Below are positions 4,790-25,772 of a DNA stretch of 64,000 bases, piece after piece. Below the pieces are notes generated by a model. The model ran no database searches and was not told the origin of the DNA. It was given only the letters and a program-made list of their open reading frames with translations. How positions within the stretch are numbered: the first letter of the stretch is position 1; each line of letters begins with the position of its first letter. Both the position numbers and the translations under genes were made by a program. This DNA comes from Selaginella moellendorffii (taxonomy: Eukaryota; Plantae; Lycopodiophyta): the NCBI RefSeq assembly GCF_000143415.4, contig NW_003314306.1:1245129-1309128 (forward strand). The letters are read 5' to 3'.

Positions 4790-5760
4790 TTTCGTATAAT
4801 AAGGATAGTGAGTAGCTCGAGCATAGTTGACCAACCTATAGTCTAGCTCCCACTTGCGTGCTTATCTTTGTTTTGCATCCGACTTAGGTCTAAAGTTCCA
4901 CACCATGTTAACTAGTGCACTACCCATATCCTTTTGTTAAGCTACCAGTATGCTAAAATAGCGCCAAACTCTATTTGGCTCTGTTTTACATACTGCTCCT
5001 GGCATTAGGATGCTGTAAACAACCACAGAAAACGACTTAAGAGACGGTCTATGGGGTTCAAATATAGAGGGAAAGGGCCCATGAATAAGAGTGCACCCCT
5101 TTTTCCAATCGGTTAAGGGTCTTGGAATACTTGTCCTTAGGTTTGAATACTGTACATTTACTGAACTCAATCCTTTAATGAAATATTGCACCTTTAGTAG
5201 CTCATTATAGGTGACTTGAGATTAAGGCAAAGATCATAGAACTTGCGGGCATACGTATCCAAAGACAAAGCCCCTTGCCGGATCTCTAATAGCTGGTTCA
5301 CAAGATCAACCTCTTCAAACTTCTTAACAAATGAAGCATAGAAAACCTTTGTCAAATTAATCCAAGAAGTCAGCTTTGGATTAGCTTTGATGTAGTTCTT
5401 CCACCACGAATAAGCATGGCCCATAAGCTTCGTCACAAAAAAATCTATCTTCAACTTATCCTCACAAGGATTGTGAGACTAACAAATTTCCCACAATTCC
5501 AACCAAAAATCAACTTCTTGACTATCACAAACATTTAGTGATGATTTCCATTCCACAATACCATAATCCTTGGCATGCTTGACATACCAATAGTAATCAC
5601 GAACATGAAATCGATTTAACCCTTGAGGTCTATGTGAAGCAAAAAATCCTTAATGAGATTGACAGAATCCTTAACTTCCTTGATCAACTAGTACAACTAA
5701 CAATGCCTTGGCTCATCTGAAAATAACTCAAACTGTTAATCATTGTGGTGCCATGAAAAC
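4790..5760 (-). mobile_element. Retrotransposon gag remnant
   Basis: ORF 5194-5454 KLMGHAYSWW...SWINLTKVFYASF...LLEIRQGALSLDTYARKF is typical Retrotrans_gag. Confidence 0.8.
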
Positions 5761-5845
5761 AAATACCTCAAACAACTGTTGTAAGAAAGTCAAGCAGATT
5801 ATAAAAGGTAGTGTTTGTGTCCTGTCACGAAAGGTAACTATATTC

Positions 5846-6760
5846 AGTTGTGTTCTTTGCTGGAACATGGATTCTCACTTGGAACTGGTGGAAAGGAAAA
5901 GACTTTGTAGATGCGCCATATGTGGGTTCCATTTCAGCTGAATTTGGCCTCAAACCAACCAGCATTCAGTACGGAAAGCATCCAGAGATTCAAGGTGAGT
6001 TGATTCAGTCTTAGAGAAATTAGGCCTATCACTGGTGATTTGTGTAGAGATTATTCCGAAGCAGTCCAAAGGAAGGAAGGAAGGTGGGAGTGTTTGTTTG
6101 CAATGCAGGAAAGTGTGGGAGTACTTTGTCAAGCTCACAAACTCAAATACTTTCATCCTCTCAATTTTGAACTGTAATGTGTGATCTTGCTTGCAGGATT
6201 TTATATTGTCGATCAATATTTGGCTTGTAAAATGGAGTGCGACTTACACTGGAAAAATACCAGCAACTTATTCCATGAGCGAGATGAAACCCTTTGGAGA
6301 AAGCTTTGTAAGTGTTGTGGCCTTGTGGAAAGATGTAATAACGATGGATAACTCCCACAAGAAGCATACAACCAAAGAAAGACACCAAGATCATTGCAGC
6401 ACATAGTTTGTAGCCCCGAGTTCTCAAGATGCCTCTAACTTGCTTCTTGATCTTACTGATGGCTTGTATTGATGAAGGCTTGGGACACACTGATGCTATT
6501 GTTTCTTCCAACAAACTTGACAATACCTAGATTTTCATTGATGTAGACCCCATTGTTTAGCTTCTTGGTTCTCTCGTGAGTAACATAAGCTTGAATGTTA
6601 ATTTTGTAGTCTGGTGATCGAAGGTCCCCACATGCATAACATTGACTATTTGCATATGTAAGTGTATCAAATTGTTCTTCATATGCACACTTGGATTATA
6701 ATAGCACCCTTTCTATTTATCAAGGATCTTCTCCATAAGGTCCAAACAAACAAAGAAGAA
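5846..6760. pseudogene. Scrambled fragment of a ferric reduction oxidase (FRO) gene
   Basis: Three blocks homologous to the FRO copy at 23.2-24.2 kb: C-terminal block on + (5846-6250, ends FHPLNFEL*), middle block on - (6258-6607), and EGPH..IAPFL..KDLLHKVQ block on + (6622-6755). Confidence 0.85.
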
Positions 6761-7580
6761 ATATGAAAGACACAGAAGCAAAACAATGGTGGATGACTCT
6801 CACTTTGATATATCATAATGCATATACATGATCAATAGTCGTGACTATCCTACATCTAGATCAGTGATGTGGCACTCATGTCACATCGACTCTCATGTCA
6901 TGGAGATTAACATGATCTCATAATGACATGAATATGAGATCACTCTCCCTTTGCATCTAAGCACTCTCATGTCCATGACAGGAAATCTGTCTCCCTCTCA
7001 AACCCTTTAGTTCTGCCTCTCTGGAATCCATGACTCTCTGCCTCCTAAATCGTCCCATGGCTGCTAGATCTCCCTCTCAGGAAACATCTATTCAAAGCAT
7101 AGCAAGGATGGATTAGGGAATACCTCAGTCCTACCAGAACCCTAATGGCTCTCTCCCTCTCCTTTGCAGCATAGTGCCTTAGGAATACTTAGCACTTAGC
7201 CCTCTTTGACACCAACCACAAGAATATTTTAAGAATATTCCATGGCCTGTGGGATGGGTTGGGGGGTTGGCCAAGGGTTCACTCTCTTGTTCATTTCATT
7301 GGTATCGGAGCAGCACGTTCTTTTGGGGATGGCGGGTGAGCAAGATATTGATCCTGATGAAGAGTATGGTGTTAGTGATAATGGCCATAACAATGCGGAA
7401 TAGACTCTTGATAATGTCATTATGTGGCAAGGATACTAGGTTTTTGAGGTTCAGAGTGACATAAGCAGAGCTCAAGATTTACATAATGTCAGAACTGTAG
7501 TATTTCGAGTGCTAGTACTTTGAAATATGAATTTGCTAGTTCTTGATTATAACAAGGATTTTTAGATGCTGCATTGCATA

Positions 7581-8653
7581 CTAAAGCTGCTGGACGAAGG
7601 CTTGACTCCTCAGAGCTTTAAGGAAAGATCGGTTGAAATAAAGCAATGTTTCTTAAGAAAGTTACATAAATTACTGATTTACTGCTGAATTTCGGGGGAT
7701 CACGAGGGAACGATATGTCCGATAGGATATTGCATTTCCCACGCTCCAGTCTCATGTAACCTCCTTCTCCCCAGCTCCTACCCCACCAGTTTTTGAGAAT
7801 CCAATACTCGACCCCATGTTGTGTCCGTCCATAGCCGACTATGAGTACAGGAAGGCTGGCCTTCGAATCAGAGCAGGGGCCTGAATATATGCCCTGCACA
7901 CGCGCAAAGAGTTTGCTATCAAATGCCCACATCCAGGAGACGTAACTTACTCCAGCATATGAATCAAATTCAGAAGCACTACCATCAATTCGAGCAATCA
8001 CCGGCTGCTTTGACACGGCCTCTACCAAGAAACTATCACTCGTTCCCGGCACAGTTCCGATTTGAGACATGGAAACATCATTAGTCTGTAAGGATAAGTT
8101 CAAAACGGTCAGTGCGACTTAAAACAACACATGACATACGAATGGCTTGCAGGAACTTTTAACGCCCGTATACGGGTACTTCGAGTCAGTAGTAATCCCA
8201 TGCAGGCGAATGTAGTTGAGCGCATGGTAAGGATCTGCAGTACCCTTCTCATTGCATCCGCTGTTGTATGTGTTGCAATCGATCAGTTGCTGTGGTGAGA
8301 GCACCACCATCCTTCCGGTTTGTATCGCTTTGAAACTCTCCACTGCACCTGCTGCTGCAAATGCCCATGACCCACCTGCAAAACTTGTGAGTAAGATATT
8401 GTCTTATCAAGTGAGTGACAAACAAAACCTTTGCAGCTTTTGCGAAGATCCACATCCCAGACTCTAGAAACAGCTCCAGATTCCCTCCAGTCGACTGAAT
8501 TGCTGAAGCTCGCCTCTTGAGACAATGCCTGTAAATTGAACTTGGGGCCCAAGTTTGCATGTTAGCGGGTGCACTGATCAGTACCTGGATCCAGATCAAC
8601 GACATTGTGAAGAAAAGAAGAAAGGAGAGTTGCAGTGGAGAAAAATATGCCAT
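7581..8653 (-). CDS. Secreted papain-family (C1A) protease-like protein, prodomain-less and predicted catalytically inactive
   Basis: Spliced model: exon 8653-8585 (signal peptide MAYFSPLQLSFLLFFTMSLIWIQ), 8528-8429, 8375-8140, 8085 onward, with GT-AG introns. Motifs VDWR, SWAF, LSPQQLIDC, YPY, QPV, VGYG, YWILKNWWGRSWGEGGYMRL. The last small exon is tentative (unspliced stop at 7618). Confidence 0.85.
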
Positions 8654-8736
8654 TTTGATTGTTGTCCGACCTACACAAAAAGTTCTTCCCATTTGTACCA
8701 CCCACGTCATTTTCATGATATATGTATTTTAATGGA

Positions 8737-10010
8737 GGCATGCTTCTCTCACTCTTACCTTTTATACTTCATACTTCACGTGGTTTACAATTAGGCTGTC
8801 TTCTAAACACATGTTTGCAGTGGAGAAAAAGACACTTCTACTTAAAAATGATATAAGAGATTATCTTACATTTGCGCGTTTCTAGGTTAGCATTAAACAA
8901 GCTATGTATGTTAATAGACATCCACTGCGTTTCTCATACTCTTACGTGTAGATGTAGGCTGCTGTCTGAGCTGGGATTGACACACACCAAGATTTTGAAA
9001 ATGAAGTGGTGTACATGCTTACAATAAAATGCATATGGAAATGGGCTCTTATTCATACTTATTAACTTCGATTTACTTGCCTCGATCTGGTTTCAGGCTT
9101 CTTGGTGGCCGATTCATCTCCAAGGACTACAAGAAATTGAAAAGTTTGTATGTAGTTTTCTTTGGACTACCGATCAGATTAGAGTTAAATGTAGAAACAT
9201 CAGGTGTAGAGCACGTGGTTTACAATTAGAATTCATATATCAAAAACAAATCCTTACAAGATTCTATCTATTCACTTTTTTTTTTCATCTAACATTAGAT
9301 GTTTTACTATTTAAATGGTTGGCATTTGAATATAAGATAACTTTCTTTCACATTGCAATATAAATCCGGCATGCTTCTCTCACTCTTACCTTTTATACTT
9401 CATACTTCACGTGGTTTACAATTAGGCTGTCTTCTAAACACATGTTTGCAGTGGAGAAAAAGACACTTCTACTTAAAAATGATATAAGAGATTATCTTAC
9501 ATTTGCGCGTTTCTCACGACGACTCTAGGTTAGCATTAAACAAGCTATGTATGTTAATAGACATCCACTGCGTTTCTCATACTCTTACGTGTAGATGTAG
9601 GCTGCTGTCTGAGCTGGGATTGACACACACCAAGATTTTGAAAATGAAGTGGTGTACATGCTTACAATAAAATGCATATGGAAATGGGCTCTTATTCATA
9701 CTTATTAACTTCGATTTACTTGCCTCGATCTGGTTTCAGGCTTCTTGGTGGCCGATTCATCTCCAAGGACTACAAGAAATTGAAAAGTTTGTATGTAGTT
9801 TTCTTTGGACTACCGATCAGATTAGAGTTAAATGTAGAAACATCAGGTGTAGAGCACGTGGTTTACAATTAGAATTCATATATCAAAAACAAATCCTTAC
9901 AAGATTCTATCTATTCACTTTTTTTTTTCATCTAACATTAGATGTTTTACTATTTAAATGGTTGGCATTTGAATATAAGATAACTTTCTTTCACATTGCA
10001 ATATAAATCC
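8737..10010. repeat. Near-perfect tandem duplication (631 bp + 643 bp) of the intergenic/bidirectional promoter
   Basis: Unit 1 is 8737-9367 and unit 2 is 9368-10010. They appear identical apart from a 12-nt insertion (CACGACGACTCT) in unit 2. Each has two CACGTGGTTTACAATTAG motifs and ends in TATAAATCC. Confidence 0.95.
10002..10008 (+). promoter_or_regulatory. Putative TATA box of the jacalin-extensin gene
   Basis: TATAAAT about 50 nt upstream of ATG 10059. Confidence 0.55.
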
Positions 10011-10058
10011 GCGTACACCAGACTGAGGAGCAGGGGACTTAATTTACCTCATTTAGCA

Positions 10059-11516
10059 ATGGCTAAATGGCTACTACTTTTCTTTGTCTTGGTATTGTTC
10101 TTCCGATGCATTTTGGGCAATGATTGAATTGTTTCATTGTGATGAAGGTTTTTGGTGCAAACGGAAAAAGATCCTCATTGTATGGTGGAACCGATGGGGA
10201 AAATTTCAGTGACGGTCAGTCTCAGGGTATTGTGAGAGTCAAGATCTGGTCTGGGTATATTGTGGATGGGATACAGGTTCAATCAGATCAAGGGGGAGAA
10301 CATGTTTGGTCTGATCCTCATGGCACTTCAAAGGGGGAAACCAAAGAGGTAGATATTTGTAATGCTCATCTTCTACTAAGATTTCTTTCAGGTGGTTTTA
10401 GCTTATCCGGATGAATACATCTACAAGATTTCAGGGCGCACTGGACCAAATCCATGGACTTCTAATGGCTTGAGTAGGCTTTACTTGCACGTCAACAATA
10501 GAAGGACCAATGCCCAAACTACCTTTGGCCCATTTGGTACCTACGACTACTCCAATCAGACTACATTTGATTCCCCAGAAGGGACAGTGGTTGGATTTTT
10601 TGGTTATGCCTCTTCAACAACATACTTCCGAGGAATTGGCGTCTATTTCCAAGATCCTTGTGACTGTCCAACACCATCACCACCGCCTTCTCCACCTCCA
10701 CCACCGCCATCACCACCGCCTTCTCCACCTCCACCACCGCCATCACCACCGCCTTCTCCACCTCCACCACCGCCCCCAAGACCCTGCAAAGGCTATCAAT
10801 GGTGCCCAGCTGGTAGTAGTTGTTGTTGTGTGGACCGTGCATGTAATAAGCACACATGCTGCATATCATCAACTCAAGGGTGCAATCCCTTGGGCTATTG
10901 TGAAGCTCTTCCACCCCCATCACCATTACCATTCCTCCAGCCATATCGCCACCACCACCACTGCCATCGCCACCACCTCCAATCTCCTCCGCCACCACCA
11001 CCAACACCATACCCACCACCTCCATCTCCTCCGCCACCACCACCACCACCATCCCCACCACCTCCATCTCCTCTGCCACCACCACCACCACCATCCCCAC
11101 CACCTCCATCTCCTCCGCCACCACCACCACCACCATCCCCACCACCTCCATCTCCTCCGCCACCACCACCACCACCATCCCCACCACCTCCATCTCCTCC
11201 GCCACCACCACCACCACCATCCCCACCACCTCCATCTCCTCCACCACCATCACCACCACCACCTCCATCTCCTCCGCCACCATCAACACCATCACCGCCA
11301 CCACCAGCCCCACCACCTCCGTCTCCAGCACCACCTTCACCACGGCCACAACCGCCATTGGGAAGATGTAAACGCTTTGATAGGTATTGCCAAAGTAGGT
11401 ATGGGCGGAAGTTTTGTTGCTGCGTGCCAAATAGCGCTGGAAACTGTGGATCCACCCGGACCTGCTGCTGTGATTCTTGTAACCCACGGAAGAATTGTGT
11501 CCAGTGTTGGGCTTAG
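10059..11516 (+). CDS. Secreted jacalin-like lectin / Ser-Pro(n) extensin / two Cys-rich modules chimeric protein
   Basis: Exons 10059-10091, ~10148-10348 and 10392-11516 with GT-AG introns. Signal peptide MAKWLLLFFVLVFGANG. Jacalin motifs YGG, SGYIVDGIQV, HG, PDEYIYKISGR, FGPFG, VVGFFG. SPPPP repeats and two CCC-containing modules. Confidence 0.88.
11010..11250 (+). repeat. 39-nt coding tandem repeat (PPPPSPPPPPPPS-type, ~6 copies)
   Basis: Repeated CCACCACCTCCATCTCCTCCGCCACCACCACCACCATCC-like unit. Confidence 0.85.
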
Positions 11517-12003: not shown

Positions 12004-12233
12004 NNNNNNNNNNNNNNNNNNNNNNNNNNNNNNNNNNNNNNNNNNNNNNNNNNNNNNNNNNNNNNNNNNNNNNNNNNNNNNNNNNNNNNNNNNNNNNNNN
12101 NNNNNNNNNNNNNNNNNNNNNNNNNNNNNNNNNNNNNNNNNNNNNNNNNNNNNNNNNNNNNNNNNNNNNNNNNNNNNNNNNNNNNNNNNNNNNNNNNNNN
12201 NNNNNNNNNNNNNNNNNNNNNNNNNNNNNNNNN
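12004..12233. other. Assembly gap
   Basis: Run of N. Confidence 1.
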
Positions 12234-16239: not shown

Positions 16240-18530
16240 AATGAGATCTTCAATGCTTGGGATAGGGAACTTGCTTTAACTGTGAGCTTGTTTTACTCTC
16301 TATAATCCACGTGATAATCGGGGCAGCAAAAGGGCTTGAGCTTTCTTCTATCATGTCATCATCTATCAGCTCGTCAATCATTTTGTCAACCATCTCTCTT
16401 TCCTGCCTGCTGAGGCACACGAACGGACTACAAGTTGGCCAAGTTCTTTCTTGAAGGCTTATGTGGTGTTGAATGCCTGTTTGCTCGATGGCCTCCTGAG
16501 AACAAACCTACCTTTGGGAACTTTTCAGCCAGTTGACGAACTGCTTCTGGAATATCTGCTGCTTTGATGTCCCATAATGCTTCTGAAATCGGCCCAAGCT
16601 CCTCAGTTTCCTGGGATTTTTCACTGCCCCCAGCTAATATCCTCCGAAAGAGCTGCCCTGCTCTCATTGCTAATCCTGAGAAGCTCACCAACTTTGAATC
16701 CCTCAGCTCAATTTTGCTTTCCTGCAGTGAAGCTTCTTTTCCTTCATCGGGTTGAGGCTTGTGGTCACTGCTTTCTTCATGCAGGGCTCCTTTTCCCCCA
16801 CTGCCTGAGTTTCCCTTGCAAGCTGGTTGCAACCTGCTTTCTTCACACAAGACTTCTTTTCTCTCGTGTGCAACCGCCATAGTATCATCCTCTTCTAAAG
16901 ACACTGAAATGCACTCTCCACTTGGTGAAAGTTGCCCGTACGTATGTCATAATACTAGGATTGTGCACTGTTGGATATAAGATGTTTATACTGGGCTAGC
17001 AAAGCGGTCAAAACTGGTCAGCAAGGTCTAGCTCCAACCCAACAATGTGTGGCCATCCTTCTCAAAGGTTAAGTGCTTTTCTTAGAAGTTGACTATGATG
17101 TCTCCTAGCTGCTGCAGAGTCTCCACTCCCAGTATGACATCAACTGCCTCCATGTCCAGCATCCAAAAGGATCCTGTGACCACATATCCTCCTGATGTGG
17201 ATGAGCAAGTAGTCTTTTGGCTACCCTTGATCACTCCCCCATCAGTGATCTTCACCTCCAGAGGATGAGCTACATCGACTAGCAAAAGCTTCAAATTTCC
17301 CAAAGACTTCCTGTTGATGAATGTGTGTGATGCACCTGAATCAATCAATGCAAAAGCCACACGTTGCCCCACATTACTTTGGACACAGAAACATTCTGGC
17401 CCAGCCTTGCCCATAAAAGCTGGTAGTGAGACTGTTCCTCAAAGAGAAGCTGAGGCAAATTGAAAGGACCTATAAGACTGGGCTCCTTATCCACTAGTGT
17501 GTCACGCACTGGGGCGTGAACCTCCATGATGAACACCTCACGATCATTGTCGATTTCATCCAGTTCATATGGTAGCAGATCACCCTGCTCGTTGGCTTGA
17601 AGTTGTATGCTAGAGACCCTGGCTCTTGGGTGTGGCACCTCCTGAGCCTTGCACACTGTGACTTCGATTCCATTTCTCGCCACAGTCAAAACACTTGCCT
17701 TTACGCAAGTCTTTGAGCCTCTTATCACGATTTACTGACGCTGGGACTCCAGTGGAGGTCGTGAAAACTGCTGTGACTGGTGTGGTGCAAAATGTTATGG
17801 TCGATTGTTTATAGCCTCTCTATGTCCATCATATCTACTAGCCAACTTCCCTTCCAAATCCCTCAACTTCATGTCTACATGCAATGCATACGTCATTGCT
17901 TGATGAACTGTTAGCGGGTTTTGAGCAATATCAACAGCCATGGACGTTGGGAGAGATGCTATACACCTCTGCATCAANNNNNNNNNNNNNNNNNNNNNNN
18001 NNNNNNNNNNNNNNNNNNNNNNNNNNNNNNNNNNNNNNNNNNNNNNNNNNNNNNNNNNNNNNNNNNNNNNNNNNNNNNNNNNNNNNNNNNNNNNNNNNNN
18101 NNNNNNNNNNNNNNNNNNNNNNNNNNNNNNNNNNNNNNNNNNNNNNNNNNNNNNNNNNNNNNNNNNNNNNNNNNNNNNNNNNNNNNNNNCAATCCTTTGA
18201 GGTGTAAAGTAGCAAACGGCACCTTATAATCCTCTGAATGTCCTTTGTAATTGAACCATCATTCAATGCAATGCAACCAATCCTGCAGCTTGATGATATC
18301 ATTCTCCCCCCCATACTCAAGAACGTTGAGCTTATCTTTTTCCTGCCATAAGTTGGACACTATTGGGTAACAAGCTGGAAAAGTTGGACTGACGATGGTG
18401 GCACCATGGGCTGGAAAGGTGGCACAACAACAGGCTGCTGCCACAGAGTTGAATTGGTGAATTTGTTGAATTGATGCATCAACGAATATGAAGCTTTTTC
18501 TGTATGTCTCACTTTGAAAAGGTAGCAAAA
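16240..18530 (-). mobile_element. Gypsy gag-protease-RT(N-terminus) remnant
   Basis: Gag-like segments (17795-17977, 18259-18528), aspartic protease LIDSGASHTF..DVILG (17082-17414), RT start SSSPFAAP..VDYRE..KFPIPSIED (~16250-16350). Contains an N gap. Confidence 0.85.
17978..18189. other. Assembly gap
   Basis: Run of N. Confidence 1.
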
Positions 18531-23179: not shown

Positions 23180-25772
23180 GTTACAATTCAAAGTTAAGAG
23201 GATGAAAGTTGAGTTTGTGAGCTTGACAAAAGACTCCCACACTTTCTTGCATTCCTTCAGGCCCACAAGCAAACACTCCCACGTACTCCTTCCTTCCTTT
23301 TGAATGCTCCGGAATAATGTCTGCACAGAATCAAACGCCTAATCCCTCTCTTAAGTCTGATTCATCAATTCACCTTGAAACTCCGGATGCTTTCCATACT
23401 GAATGTTGGTTGGCTTGAGTCCAACTTCAGTTGAAATGGAACCCATATGGCGCATCTACAAGGTGCAAGTCTTTTCCTTTCCACCAGTTCCAAGCGAGAA
23501 TCGTTGCTCCACCGAAGAACACAACTCCAGCAACGTATTCCATGAGCAAGCTGAAACCCCTCCCTGCTCTGGAGAAAGCTTTGTAGGTGTTCTGGTCTTG
23601 TGGAAAGATGTAATAGCGATGAATAACTCCGGCAAGGAGCATGTAACCAAGGAAAGATGCCAAGATCGTTGCAGCATATAGTCTGTAGCCCTGAGTTCTC
23701 GAGATTCCTCTAACTTGCTTCTTGACCTTACTGATGTCTTGTGATGGAGAAGGCTCGGCACACACTGATGCTGTTGTTGCTCTTCCAGCAAACTTGACAA
23801 TGTCCAGCTTTTCATCGTAGACCCCATTGTCCAGGGCTTGTTGCTTCTCTCCTATATCTTGGCGAGTAACATAAGCTTGAATGTCAATTTGAAGAGTTTG
23901 TATGAATATTGTTTTGAGAATGCCAAGCTCATCCAGCTTCCTCACCGCCCACACAAGAAAAATCTTCTCCAGTGGAGTGCGCTGCTTTGTTTGGACCTTG
24001 TGGAGAAGATCCTTGATAATCGATAGAAAAGGAGCTATTCCACTTCCCCCAGCAACGAATAAGTACATTTTGTATCTAACAAAGTAACCCATCATAAGAG
24101 CAAAGTCATATATTTAATACACTTACATATGCAAATAGTCAATGTTATGCCCGTGGGGACTTGGATTCTCGTTGGAAATACTTCTGTAACCCTCTTGGAT
24201 GAAGAGCTCCCTGAGTTTGTATGTCCATTTTCCACTTCACTTCACTAAAATCGAGAGCTTGTCAAACTCGACTCCAGAGCAGGAGGTGACTGTAAATGAA
24301 TGCCACTGCAGACTTGAAGTCGCAGGGAGGTTCACAAAAATCACACTTGCTGCGTCATATCTGCAAAAATAAGAACAAAAAATATTAATACAGATATTAA
24401 AAAAATAGATAAGTATAATACTTGGGAGTTTTGCAAACGTCAGCTCTATGGTCTCACTACAGATCATCCTTGCCGATACCACCTCAACATGCCTTCTGGA
24501 TTGTAAGAGCCTGAATAGTCTATCGCTCTACATTTTGTTTGTGATTGGATTCGTTTTTCCATGTGGGAGAGAAATGGCTTGCCATGATAGTATAATAAAA
24601 GAGCTCAAATCTCTGCTTGTGAACAGAATTGAGTGATGTGACCCAAATAATCAGGCCAACAATCCATGCAATCGTCTTCTCCCACAAAATAAAATGGACC
24701 AAAAACAGAATAAAGTTTAAAAATTGTAAAAAAAAGGTTTACCTCTTTGGATTGTGAGAAATTGACACAATCCAAATGTGATAGCGGATCGAGTGCTCAA
24801 CATTGATAAGCTGGACAAGGGAGGAAAATCTTGCAACTGGAAAGAAAAGAAATGCAAACGGGACGGCCCAAGCCTGCCTCCAACGATGTTAAACTTCCTC
24901 TGCCACCTTCTTGTTTCAATCAAGAAAAGTACATCTCAGTTGAGAGTTCGTGACTTTGAGACACTTAATACTTACAAAGGATCCATGTGGTCGCTCATTC
25001 CGGGATGCGTCATGAATGGAATATTGATCCTGTAGAAAGATCTTGAGGTGTTTAGCGGTCATCCAAGCAAACAAAGCCACAAAAGCCCCAAGCAGCGCCA
25101 ACTCGGATAATGAGATTAGCGCTAATGGGACTCTAACAAACACTGGATAGTTCCATGGATTTATCTTAAGTGGCTTCATGGTCCTGCATAAAAGAAAGAA
25201 AAAGAGGATGCTTAAATTATTATCAAAGAAGAATTTGAGATTCTAGCTCACTTGCTTCTCTTGCTGTAACTTAGATAAATGGCTCTAACAAACGCCACCA
25301 GGAGTATGGGGGAGAAGTAAATAAGCGTGTATGCCCCTGGAAGAATCACAGTGAGCAGTGCTATCAACTTCCTGGCGCGATTATATACCAGTGTCGCGAT
25401 ATGCTTTGGAGGAGACATGACGAAGAACAGGATTCCAGAATCCACGTTCTCGTTGGCCTCATGAGGAACAGGGCGTCGCCCAGGATCGCGCCCAGTATTA
25501 ATCTGGCAAGAGAATATTCTGGCAAAGCCATTTGTAGTATGATCTTCGCAAAGCACCGGACACTTTGATAGGTCCTTGGTGTAAGAAATTCTCGAAATTA
25601 TTGCCTTCTCCCTCTCCTCCAGCGCCAGAGCCCGGTGTCCCTGTGTTTGCCATGCCAAGGATTCCAGAAATTTTTTGTCCAAGTTCTCGTTGGCTTCATG
25701 ATCCAGATCATCATCCATCTTGCAAAGACAATCGCCATGAAAGCCTTGGCAGCAACACGAAGAAAAGCCATT
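23180..25772 (-). pseudogene. FRO: FRO ferric reduction oxidase pseudogene (tandem paralog)
   Basis: MAFLRVAAKAFM..WIMKPT; INPWNYPVFVR; WHSFTVTS; FVAGGSGIAPF; FHPLNFEL*. Shows frameshifts, deletions (no middle TM exon sequence, no EGP motif), an inverted block and a second copy of exon 1. Confidence 0.85.

What the first reader, a model, noticed from the sequence alone, without database searches (positions are those of the whole stretch)
7581..11516. Candidate two-gene secreted module: dead papain + jacalin-extensin-Cys protein, head-to-head on a duplicated promoter inside a transposon graveyard
Seen: the only apparently intact genes in the first 23 kb are divergently oriented. Both have signal peptides and open spliced frames, and their spacer is almost entirely a recent tandem duplication. 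Known: RD21-type proteases have protease + Pro-rich linker + Cys-rich granulin; jacalins and papain-like proteases are common apoplastic defence components; pathogens secrete inhibitors of papain-like proteases. Inference: the pair may be a co-expressed cell-wall surveillance unit, with an inactive protease as decoy or ligand-binder and a wall-anchored lectin partner that carries the Pro-rich/Cys-rich parts the protease lacks.
Basis: partly seen in the sequence, partly recalled or inferred. Interest (0 to 1): 0.82.

Follow-up and report, generated by a model that had tools for sequence, protein, structure and literature searches.

The report
Dead protease beside granulin-carrying lectin gene
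In a spikemoss, a protease gene that has lost its cutting residues and its usual cysteine-rich tail lies head-to-head with a lectin gene carrying that kind of tail, so the two proteins may pair up outside the cell, though no expression or binding data show this yet.

Summary
The window is Selaginella moellendorffii GL377610.1. It carries a five-exon gene for a secreted papain-like protein with no prodomain, Cys25>Ser and His159>Leu (RefSeq XP_024541519.1). It lies head-to-head with a three-exon gene for signal peptide, jacalin domain, two SP(n) linkers and two Cys-rich modules. Of the 1405-bp spacer, 91% is a 631/643-bp tandem duplication.

New here:
- Module 1 is a mini-granulin, homologous to the C-terminal tails of sister dead papains in this genome.
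- All 13 dead papains sampled form one clade. Three lineages carry linker plus mini-granulin in cis.
- A second locus (GL377567.1) also encodes the tail in the gene next to a tail-less dead papain.
- A complex prediction docks module 1 on the dead papain: 0.87 against a best control of 0.00, though one of three runs gave 0.00.

Against a working module:
- The papain-jacalin pairing has one origin: two alleles and one young block duplicate.
- No orthologues were found and no expression data could be reached.
- Exons have diverged as fast as introns.
- The other allele has lost three cysteines in module 1.

Verdict: a real gene pair, plausibly a "split RD21-like" pair. The co-expressed surveillance-unit reading is unproven. 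The scan has reported dead papains, and a "split RD21" idea, on other DNA of this genome.

The parts
7618..8653 (-). Dead papain-like gene (XP_024541519.1, 'ervatamin-B', 271 aa). Exons 8653-8585, 8528-8429, 8375-8140, 8085-7951 and 7893-7618 (stop included). It encodes a signal peptide and then the mature domain directly.
   Evidence: Peptidase_C1 E 1.2e-49; Ser for Cys25 (codon in exon 3, GGSWAF); Leu for His159 (exon 5, SLPVLIVGYG); no I29 match.
8759..8766 (-). TATA-like element (TATAAAAG on the minus strand), about 106-113 nt upstream of the papain ATG and inside the repeat unit.
   Evidence: Read directly. Inference only.
8737..9367 (.). Spacer repeat unit, copy 1 (631 bp). It runs from the papain-side core promoter to the jacalin-side TATA box.
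9368..10010 (.). Spacer repeat unit, copy 2 (643 bp), identical to copy 1 except for a 12-bp insertion (TCTCACGACGAC).
8777..8794 (+). 18-mer CACGTGGTTTACAATTAG containing a G-box. It occurs twice per unit; the other copies are at 9212-9229, 9408-9425 and 9855-9872.
   Evidence: Read. Conserved in L001 and L004. Regulatory role inferred, not tested.
10002..10008 (+). TATAAAT, 51-57 nt upstream of the jacalin gene's ATG, at the end of the repeat unit.
   Evidence: Read. Inference only.
10059..11516 (+). Jacalin / SP(n)-linker / Cys-module gene. Exons 10059-10091, 10148-10348 and 10392-11516 (stop included).
   Evidence: The N-terminal 168 aa equal JGI model P0006. The long exon-3 ORF is also intact in the paralogue L004.
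10148..10661 (+). Jacalin-like domain, split by the 43-nt intron at 10349-10391. The canonical GxxxD Asp is replaced by Arg (YFRGIG).
10662..10775 (+). Extensin-like SP(3-6) linker 1 (three copies of a 33-nt repeat).
10776..10907 (+). Cys-rich module 1, a mini-granulin with 10 Cys (C-x5-C-x5-CCC-x4-C-x4-CC-x6-C-x5-C).
   Evidence: It was the partner chain in the complex prediction.
10908..11360 (+). Extensin-like linker 2 (about nine copies of a 42-nt repeat). It includes a His-rich stretch, 10932-10982, that is a Pro-rich segment read out of phase.
11361..11513 (+). Cys-rich module 2 (12 Cys). It has a granulin-like cysteine spacing but no significant match.
   Evidence: Present in all three copies.

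Best explanation
This is a real head-to-head gene pair, so far found only in Selaginella moellendorffii, and it amounts to an RD21-type protease architecture split over two secreted proteins.

Gene 1 is a non-catalytic papain-fold protein from an old, spikemoss-wide clade of dead papains of RD21-like ancestry. This lineage has lost both the prodomain and the Pro-rich linker plus granulin tail.

Gene 2 joins a jacalin-type domain with a remodelled sugar site to two hydroxyproline-type SP(n) rods and two disulphide-rich modules. The first module is a mini-granulin of the kind that sister dead papains carry in cis.

Proposed mechanism. Both genes are transcribed from the shared intergenic unit, which holds both TATA-like elements and two G-box 18-mers. 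Both proteins enter the secretory pathway. The mini-granulin then docks on the papain-fold protein away from the former catalytic residues. This would tether a binding-only 'protease' to a glycan- or wall-associated scaffold.

Shown: gene structures, domain identities, loss of the catalytic residues, homology of module 1 to papain tails, clade structure, a second split locus, and the duplication history. Inferred: secretion, co-expression, docking, and any decoy or sensor role.
For: - The gene models match database proteins.
- Pfam assigns the domains.
- The catalytic substitutions, plus a clade-wide one-residue insertion before the Cys25 position, are shared.
- All 13 S. moellendorffii dead papains sampled form one clade (SH-aLRT 99). 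Tails in cis are found in P0032/P0176, P0183 and P0169/P0171.
- Module 1 matches the P0032 tail at BLASTP E 2e-7.
- The profile of mini-granulins matches true granulins at 75% probability, E 2.5e-5.
- Five of the top nine Foldseek PDB rows for the module-1 model are granulins or paragranulin. None is significant: the best has E 1.4.
- At the independent locus L009, a signal peptide + I29 remnant + Pro-rich + mini-granulin gene lies 238 bp upstream of the tail-less dead papain P0043.
- Complex prediction gave 0.87 against a best control of 0.00. That mark was reached by 51 of 78 solved complexes and 2 of 108 mismatched pairs; on eukaryotes, by 39 of 65 solved pairs and 2 of 126 unrelated pairs. 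The runs scored 0.87, 0.00 and 0.87, the partner's pLDDT was at least 42, and contact agreement was at least 11%.
- Both genes are intact in the paralogous block L004.
Against: - The papain-jacalin pairing has a single origin. L001 is the allele and L004 is a young block duplicate, so recurrence there is inherited.
- No other dead papain has a jacalin neighbour, and the jacalin-linker-Cys paralogue P0007 has no papain neighbour.
- Adjacency could simply record a local rearrangement that moved the tail.
- Since the duplication there is no detectable constraint. Exons differ by 2.0-2.8% and introns by 2.5%. Omega is about 0.5 for the papain (P 0.10) and about 2.65 for the jacalin domain (1 synonymous, 9 non-synonymous changes, not significant).
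- The L001 allele has lost 3 of the 10 cysteines of module 1, and many of the predicted interface residues.
- One of the three complex runs scored 0.00 with partner pLDDT 43. The model may be reproducing a papain-granulin contact learned from single-chain RD21-like proteins, so a pass does not show that this particular copy binds.
- Pfam Granulin does not match module 1.
- No transcript evidence for either gene was reachable. I found no RefSeq model for the window's jacalin gene.
Confidence: 0.4

Rival explanations
1. The two are independent neighbours. Both belong to expanded secreted-protein families of spikemoss. They lie together by accident, or because a local rearrangement moved a linker-granulin tail from the papain gene to the jacalin gene. 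They were then copied as one block. They neither bind each other nor share regulation in any meaningful way.
For: - The pairing is found only in the allele and one block duplicate.
- Paralogues of each family are unpaired.
- Linker-plus-Cys-module tails occur on several unrelated secreted domains in this genome (P0007; scan notes).
- The spacer is 0.75-1.55 kb and variable, so it is not a tight bidirectional promoter.
Against: - The complex prediction passes with zero-scoring controls.
- The same tail sits in cis in three sister lineages and in the neighbouring gene at a second, independent dead-papain locus. That is hard to explain without a functional link between the papain fold and the mini-granulin.
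Confidence: 0.35
2. These are young copies drifting towards pseudogenes. One or both genes at this locus are no longer under selection, and their open frames persist only because the copies are recent and CCN-rich repeats contain no stop codons.
For: - Exon divergence equals intron divergence, and omega cannot be told from 1.
- The jacalin domain shows 1 synonymous against 9 non-synonymous changes.
- The L001 allele has lost three cysteines in module 1.
- Linker 2 contains an out-of-phase His-rich stretch.
- L004 has lost the last cysteine of module 2 through a frameshift.
- The Pro-rich region is open in two frames.
Against: - The lineage sits on a long branch (about 1.55 changes per site) inside the dead-papain clade. 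It still scores 170 bits against Peptidase_C1 and keeps all six structural cysteines and five intact exons in three copies. That requires long-term purifying selection up to the recent past.
- RefSeq gives two splice isoforms for the papain gene in the other two copies.
- Too few substitutions have accumulated for the test to have power.
Confidence: 0.15
3. The perfect spacer duplication is an assembly artefact and has no biological meaning.
For: The two copies show no substitutions across the 631 bp they share. The assembly has N gaps nearby, at about 12005-12233 in the window and inside the L001 gene.
Against: Both haplotypes were assembled separately and both carry arrays with the same unit boundaries but different unit structure and copy number: two copies of 631/643 bp against three of 474 bp. 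The paralogous block has one copy. This pattern fits a real, unstable tandem array.
Confidence: 0.05

Closest known systems
[quoted passage not shown]
   Same: The same building blocks are present: signal peptide, C1A papain fold with three disulphides, Pro-rich linker and a granulin-type Cys-rich module. [quoted passage not shown]
   Different: - The blocks are spread over two divergent genes rather than one chain.
- The protease has Ser and Leu in place of the catalytic Cys and His, and has no prodomain.
- The granulin is a 10-Cys mini version, against 14 Cys in plant granulins, and it is not matched by Pfam PF00396.
- The granulin is attached to a jacalin domain.
Other dead papains of S. 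moellendorffii (XP_024523772.1/XP_024521928.1 'zingipain-1', XP_024541217.1 'zingipain-2', XP_002961060.1 'ervatamin-B', XP_002971529.2 with LamG)
   Same: They share the clade (SH-aLRT 99), the loss of the catalytic Cys and His, and the same one-residue insertion before the Cys25 position.
   Different: Those proteins carry the linker and mini-granulin (or a LamG domain) in cis and have no jacalin neighbour. The copy in this window has no tail.
Split locus on GL377567.1 (prodomain-linker-mini-granulin gene next to the tail-less dead papain XP_024545824.1)
   Same: A tail-less dead papain sits next to a gene that supplies the Pro-rich linker and mini-granulin.
   Different: The orientation is tandem, not head-to-head. 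The partner's N-terminal part is an I29 prodomain remnant, not a jacalin domain. That papain keeps its own prodomain.
Jacalin-related chimerolectins of plants (for example dirigent-jacalin proteins; from my own knowledge and PMC6362431)
   Same: A jacalin domain is fused to an unrelated module. The jacalin family is expanded in S. moellendorffii (PMC6362431).
   Different: This one is secreted and has SP(n) linkers and granulin-like modules at the C-terminus. The canonical Asp of the sugar-binding loop is Arg.
Non-peptidase C1A homologues and protease decoys (soybean P34, Plasmodium SERA5 with Ser for Cys, and tomato Rcr3, an active protease guarded by Cf-2; from my own knowledge)
   Same: Each has a papain fold used, or proposed to be used, for binding rather than cutting. 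In each the protein is an apoplastic or secreted target of pathogen molecules.
   Different: There is no evidence here for any pathogen ligand or receptor. These proteins resemble this one in how they work, but nothing shows they belong to the same family.

Membership tests
Peptidase family C1A (papain-like) | Papain fold / Peptidase_C1 domain | tested here: met
   PF00112 matches residues 33-243 at E 1.2e-49 and 169.7 bits. It also matches exon by exon.
Peptidase family C1A (papain-like) | Catalytic Cys25-His159 dyad with the oxyanion Gln19 | tested here: not met
   In a 76-sequence alignment, Ser stands at the Cys25 column and Leu at the His159 column. Gln19 is not conserved. Asn175 is kept. 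The protein is therefore a non-peptidase homologue.
Peptidase family C1A (papain-like) | I29 inhibitory prodomain (ERFNIN) | tested here: not met
   No PF08246 match in P0012. The mature-type N-terminus (SVDWR) starts about 10 residues after the signal peptide.
Peptidase family C1A (papain-like) | Three conserved disulphide pairs | tested here: met
   Six cysteines, at positions 55, 90, 97, 132, 187 and 234, fall in the conserved Cys columns.
RD21-like PLCP | Protease, Pro-rich domain and granulin in one polypeptide | tested here: not met
   The papain gene ends without a tail. The linker and mini-granulin are in the neighbouring gene.
Granulin (PF00396) | 12-Cys framework (14 in plants) and a match to the family profile | tested here: inconclusive
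   - No Pfam match, even at E up to 10.
- Module 1 has only 10 Cys.
- The N-terminal half C-x5-C-x5-CCC aligns to true plant granulins (hhalign 75%, E 2.5e-5).
- BLASTP gives E 2e-7 against the tail of P0032, which UniRef names 'Granulins domain-containing protein'.
- Granulins head the Foldseek list but without significance.
Jacalin-related lectin | Jacalin beta-prism domain | tested here: met
   PF01419 matches both exon halves above the cut-off. Mannose-binding jacalin-type lectins in the PDB match at E down to 4e-11.
Jacalin-related lectin | Canonical sugar-binding loop with Asp (G-x-x-x-D; YLDAIG in mannose-binding members) | tested here: not met
   In the alignment to 4mq0, 1zgr and 7kmv, YFRGIG stands where those have YLDA/SIG, so the Asp is Arg. 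There is also a two-residue insertion. Sugar binding itself cannot be tested with these tools.
Extensin / hydroxyproline-rich glycoprotein | Repeated Ser-Pro(3-5) motifs | tested here: met
   Read directly from the exon-3 ORF. Repeats of 33 and 42 nt.
Extensin / hydroxyproline-rich glycoprotein | Tyr-containing cross-linking motifs (YXY, VYK) for covalent wall insertion | tested here: not met
   Neither linker has a YXY or VYK motif. The two Tyr in linker 2 are isolated. Covalent wall anchoring is therefore not supported.
Bidirectional (shared-promoter) gene pair | Head-to-head genes with a short shared spacer and correlated expression | tested here: inconclusive
   Head-to-head orientation is confirmed. 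The spacer is 1405 bp here, about 1.55 kb in the allele and about 0.75 kb in the paralogue. Expression could not be tested with these tools.

The most novel reading that the evidence does not exclude
The granulin module of RD21-type proteases is a docking domain for the papain fold. Spikemoss has twice separated it genetically from a catalytically dead papain. At this locus it is grafted onto a jacalin and hydroxyproline-rich scaffold, so the two secreted proteins reassemble non-covalently in the apoplast as a tethered binding or decoy complex.
Probability: 0.22. Interest if true: 0.75.

Novelty: new variant of a known kind. Interest (0 to 1): 0.55.

Why it matters
[quoted passage not shown] Here, and at a second locus in the same genome, the granulin-type module and the papain fold are encoded by separate neighbouring genes. 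The papain is catalytically dead, so it cannot cleave the module off. This makes 'does granulin bind the protease domain?' directly testable with two recombinant proteins. It also adds a documented clade of non-catalytic papain-fold proteins in an early vascular plant, and a new chimerolectin architecture. If the pair does not interact, the locus remains a clear example of domain shuffling and an unstable promoter-spanning tandem array, which is of modest interest.

Tried and rejected
- Pfam Granulin on the Cys modules and on the paralogue tails gave no match, even at E up to 10.
- Module 2 has no significant match to true granulin, to the P0032 tail or to module 1 (E 0.05-0.28). It stays unassigned.
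- Module 1 shows no similarity to the Cys tail of the jacalin paralogue P0007. The tail is therefore not an ancestral feature of this jacalin family.
- Foldseek PDB on the module-1 model gave nothing significant.
- Orthologue searches found nothing between about 45% and 96% identity to the papain in the 5.8-billion-protein index. The 50%-clustered library cannot resolve closer relatives.
- Gene identifiers (SELMODRAFT_*, Smo*, LOC9638549) appear in no paper of the library, so I found no expression evidence.
- The apparent 'truncated' jacalin allele on the other haplotype (P0005, P0015) is rejected. It is an artefact of an N gap inside linker 2, and module 2 is intact beyond the gap.
- The 91-92% BLAST identity to the paralogous block might suggest an old duplicate. 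That is rejected: substitutions are only 2-4%, and the rest is indels.
- The dN/dS tests are underpowered and not significant in either direction.
- The residue numbering of chain 1 in the complex output may be by chain or by protein, so I did not map the interface onto papain subsites. In either numbering it excludes the former catalytic positions.
Searches used single exons by reference, an intron-4 read-through ORF without stops, or the database proteins P0012 and P0006 returned by the tools.
Full report
**Identity of the DNA**

The window is Selaginella moellendorffii scaffold GL377610.1. Locus L003, fetched through a database protein, is 100% identical to the window with an offset of 58 bases. 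The genome assembly holds both haplotypes. Locus L001 (GL377597.1) is collinear with the window over 18 kb at 92-99% identity, so it is the allelic copy.

**The dead papain gene (minus strand)**

- Reading the reverse strand gives five exons: 8653-8585, 8528-8429, 8375-8140, 8085-7951 and 7893-7618. The GT-AG introns are 53-57 nt long.
- The product equals RefSeq XP_024541519.1 (P0012, 271 aa, named 'ervatamin-B').
- Pfam finds Peptidase_C1 over residues 33-243 (E 1.2e-49) and no I29 prodomain.
- In a 76-sequence alignment the catalytic Cys column holds Ser (GGSWAF) and the His column holds Leu (SLPVLIVGYG). Asn is kept and Gln19 is not conserved. All six structural cysteines are present.

The 'dead, prodomain-less papain' is confirmed.

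**The jacalin gene (plus strand)**

- The exons are 10059-10091, 10148-10348 and 10392-11516, with introns of 56 and 43 nt.
- Pfam Jacalin matches both halves above its cut-off.
- The first 168 residues are identical to the JGI model P0006. That model then splices out the whole Pro/Cys-rich part with a frame change, which I take to be a mis-annotation.
- The long exon-3 ORF encodes an SP(3-6) linker, a 10-Cys module, a long SP(n) linker (about nine 42-nt repeats) and a 12-Cys module.
- The paralogous copy L004 keeps the same exon-3 architecture, with shorter linkers, in one 307-codon ORF.
- The jacalin domain aligns to mannose-binding jacalin-type lectins in the PDB (E down to 4e-11). The Asp of the sugar-binding loop is Arg: YFRGIG against YLDAIG.
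- The linkers lack the Tyr cross-link motifs of extensins, so covalent wall anchoring is not supported.

**The spacer**

- The 1405 bp between the two ATGs contain two tandem units, 8737-9367 and 9368-10010. They are identical except for a 12-bp indel.
- The allele has three copies of a 474-bp version with the same end points. The paralogous block has a single copy.
- The window's unit also carries an inverted central segment relative to the other two.
- The array is therefore real, polymorphic and internally homogenised, rather than one recent event in this haplotype alone.
- The unit runs from a TATA-like element on the papain side (8759-8766) to TATAAAT on the jacalin side (10002-10008). 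It holds two copies of the G-box-containing 18-mer CACGTGGTTTACAATTAG. In effect, the whole intergenic promoter unit is what is repeated. The regulatory consequences are inferred, not tested.

**Does the pairing recur?**

- A third copy of the pair lies on GL377578.1 (L004): papain P0013 and an intact jacalin-linker-Cys gene, head-to-head.
- Similarity to the window is confined to about 4-5 kb around the pair. Substitution divergence is only 2-4%. This is a young block duplicate.
- Independent paralogues are not paired. The jacalin-linker-Cys paralogue P0007 has no papain neighbour.
- The dead papains P0171, P0183, P0033, P0038, P0043 and P0032 have no jacalin neighbour.
- No orthologue of the papain between 45% and 96% identity exists in the protein index.

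The papain-jacalin pairing therefore has one origin.

**Selection**

I compared the three copies exon by exon.

| Region | Synonymous changes | Non-synonymous changes | Omega | Significance |
|---|---|---|---|---|
| Papain | about 8 | about 14 | about 0.5 | P 0.10 |
| Jacalin domain | 1 | 9 | about 2.65 | not significant |
| Cys modules | - | - | 0.5-0.8 | not significant |

- Exons differ from L004 by 2.0-2.8% and introns by 2.5%. No constraint is detectable since the duplication, but the test has little power.
- Two papain sites (residues 92 and 115) differ in all three copies.
- Module 1 of the allele L001 has lost three of its ten cysteines and is about 18% diverged.
- Long-term constraint is nevertheless implied. 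The lineage sits on a long branch yet keeps a 170-bit Peptidase_C1 match and intact exons in all three copies.

**What the Cys-rich modules are**

- Module 1 matches the C-terminal tail of P0032 at BLASTP E 2e-7, with all cysteines aligned. P0032 is a dead papain with a prodomain that UniRef names 'Granulins domain-containing protein'.
- A profile of spikemoss mini-granulins aligns to the N-terminal half of true plant granulins that do match PF00396. The result is 75% probability and E 2.5e-5.
- An AlphaFold model of module 1 (pLDDT 70.6, two hairpins) finds nothing significant in the PDB. Even so, five of the top nine rows are granulins or paragranulin.
- Pfam itself does not match.
- Module 2 remains unassigned.

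**The family context**

- A tree places all 13 S. moellendorffii dead papains sampled in one clade (SH-aLRT 99). They share a one-residue insertion before the Cys25 position.
- Three lineages carry a Pro-rich linker and mini-granulin in cis: P0032/P0176, P0183/P0060 and P0169/P0171.
- One lineage carries a LamG domain (P0033).
- The window's lineage has no tail.
- The tail-less P0043 has a separate gene 238 bp upstream on GL377567.1. Its N-terminus matches the signal peptide and I29 prodomain of P0183 (E 3e-8). It continues into a Pro-rich linker and a mini-granulin (E 1e-4 against the P0183 tail).

So the tail is encoded by the neighbouring gene of a tail-less dead papain at two independent loci. 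This is a Rosetta-stone type argument for a functional link between the papain fold and the mini-granulin. Local rearrangement or complementary degeneration of duplicates could also explain the adjacency.

**Complex prediction**

I tested the dead papain (P0012 residues 24-256) with module 1 as the partner.

- Score 0.87, best of three controls 0.00.
- That mark was reached by 51 of 78 solved complexes and 2 of 108 mismatched pairs. On eukaryotes it was reached by 39 of 65 solved pairs and 2 of 126 unrelated pairs.
- The three runs scored 0.87, 0.00 and 0.87.
- The partner's pLDDT was at least 42, and the runs agreed in at least 11% of contacts. My alignments were not used.
- The named interface excludes the former catalytic positions under either possible numbering.

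The pass supports binding but does not show it. It may reflect a papain-granulin contact learned from single-chain RD21-like proteins, and it does not say which family member binds.

**Verdict**

Co-expression, lectin activity, wall anchoring and any decoy or surveillance role are untested. The recent evolution of both genes cannot be told from neutral drift.

I put about 0.4 on a functional 'split RD21-like' pair, 0.35 on independent neighbours, 0.15 on drifting young copies, and the small remainder on other explanations.

The spliced products were searched exon by exon or through the database proteins that the tools returned.

Earlier notes of this scan had already reported dead papains, jacalin chimeras and a 'split RD21' idea on other DNA of this genome. 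I re-derived the points I use from sequence.

Noticed in passing
L009:7098-7763 (+), GL377567.1: A gene for signal peptide, I29-prodomain remnant, Pro-rich linker and mini-granulin, with no protease domain. It lies 238 bp upstream, in tandem, of the tail-less dead papain XP_024545824.1. This is a second 'split RD21' locus.
   Followed up: partly
window 5681-7464: This 1.8-kb segment just beyond the papain gene's 3' end is inverted in the window relative to both the allelic haplotype (L001) and the paralogous block (L004). It is therefore an inversion derived in this haplotype.
   Followed up: no
L001:~7490-7590 (GL377597.1): An N gap inside linker 2 of the allelic jacalin gene makes the database models wrong. 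EFJ22014.1 reads into the 3' UTR. RefSeq XP_024537545.1 is spliced over 5 kb to a C-terminal exon that looks by eye like a retrotransposon integrase.
   Followed up: partly
window 10661-11400: JGI model EFJ18275.1 (P0006) removes the whole linker and Cys-module region as an 'intron' and continues in another frame. I found no RefSeq protein for this window's jacalin gene.
   Followed up: partly
window 10932-10982: A His-rich stretch (FLQPYRHHHHCHRHHLQ) in linker 2 is a Pro-rich repeat segment read out of phase. The frame returns to the Pro phase downstream.
   Followed up: partly
L001:7654-7785 (-): Module 1 of the allelic copy is about 18% diverged from the window (7 synonymous and 16 non-synonymous changes in 43 codons), whereas the flanks differ by about 1-2%. 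Three cysteines are lost. Gene conversion from another paralogue, or local decay, could explain this; it remains unexplained.
   Followed up: no
L008:9540-9866 (+), GL377565.1: A decayed fragment of a dead papain with a linker/Cys tail lies between the tail-less P0038 and another Peptidase_C1 gene. This looks like a small cluster of dead-papain copies in different states of decay.
   Followed up: no
window 17085-17414 (-) and 23430-24095 (-): The first ORF has a retroviral aspartyl-protease domain and is a retrotransposon remnant. The second has a ferric-reductase NAD-binding domain and marks the start of the next ordinary gene.
   Followed up: no
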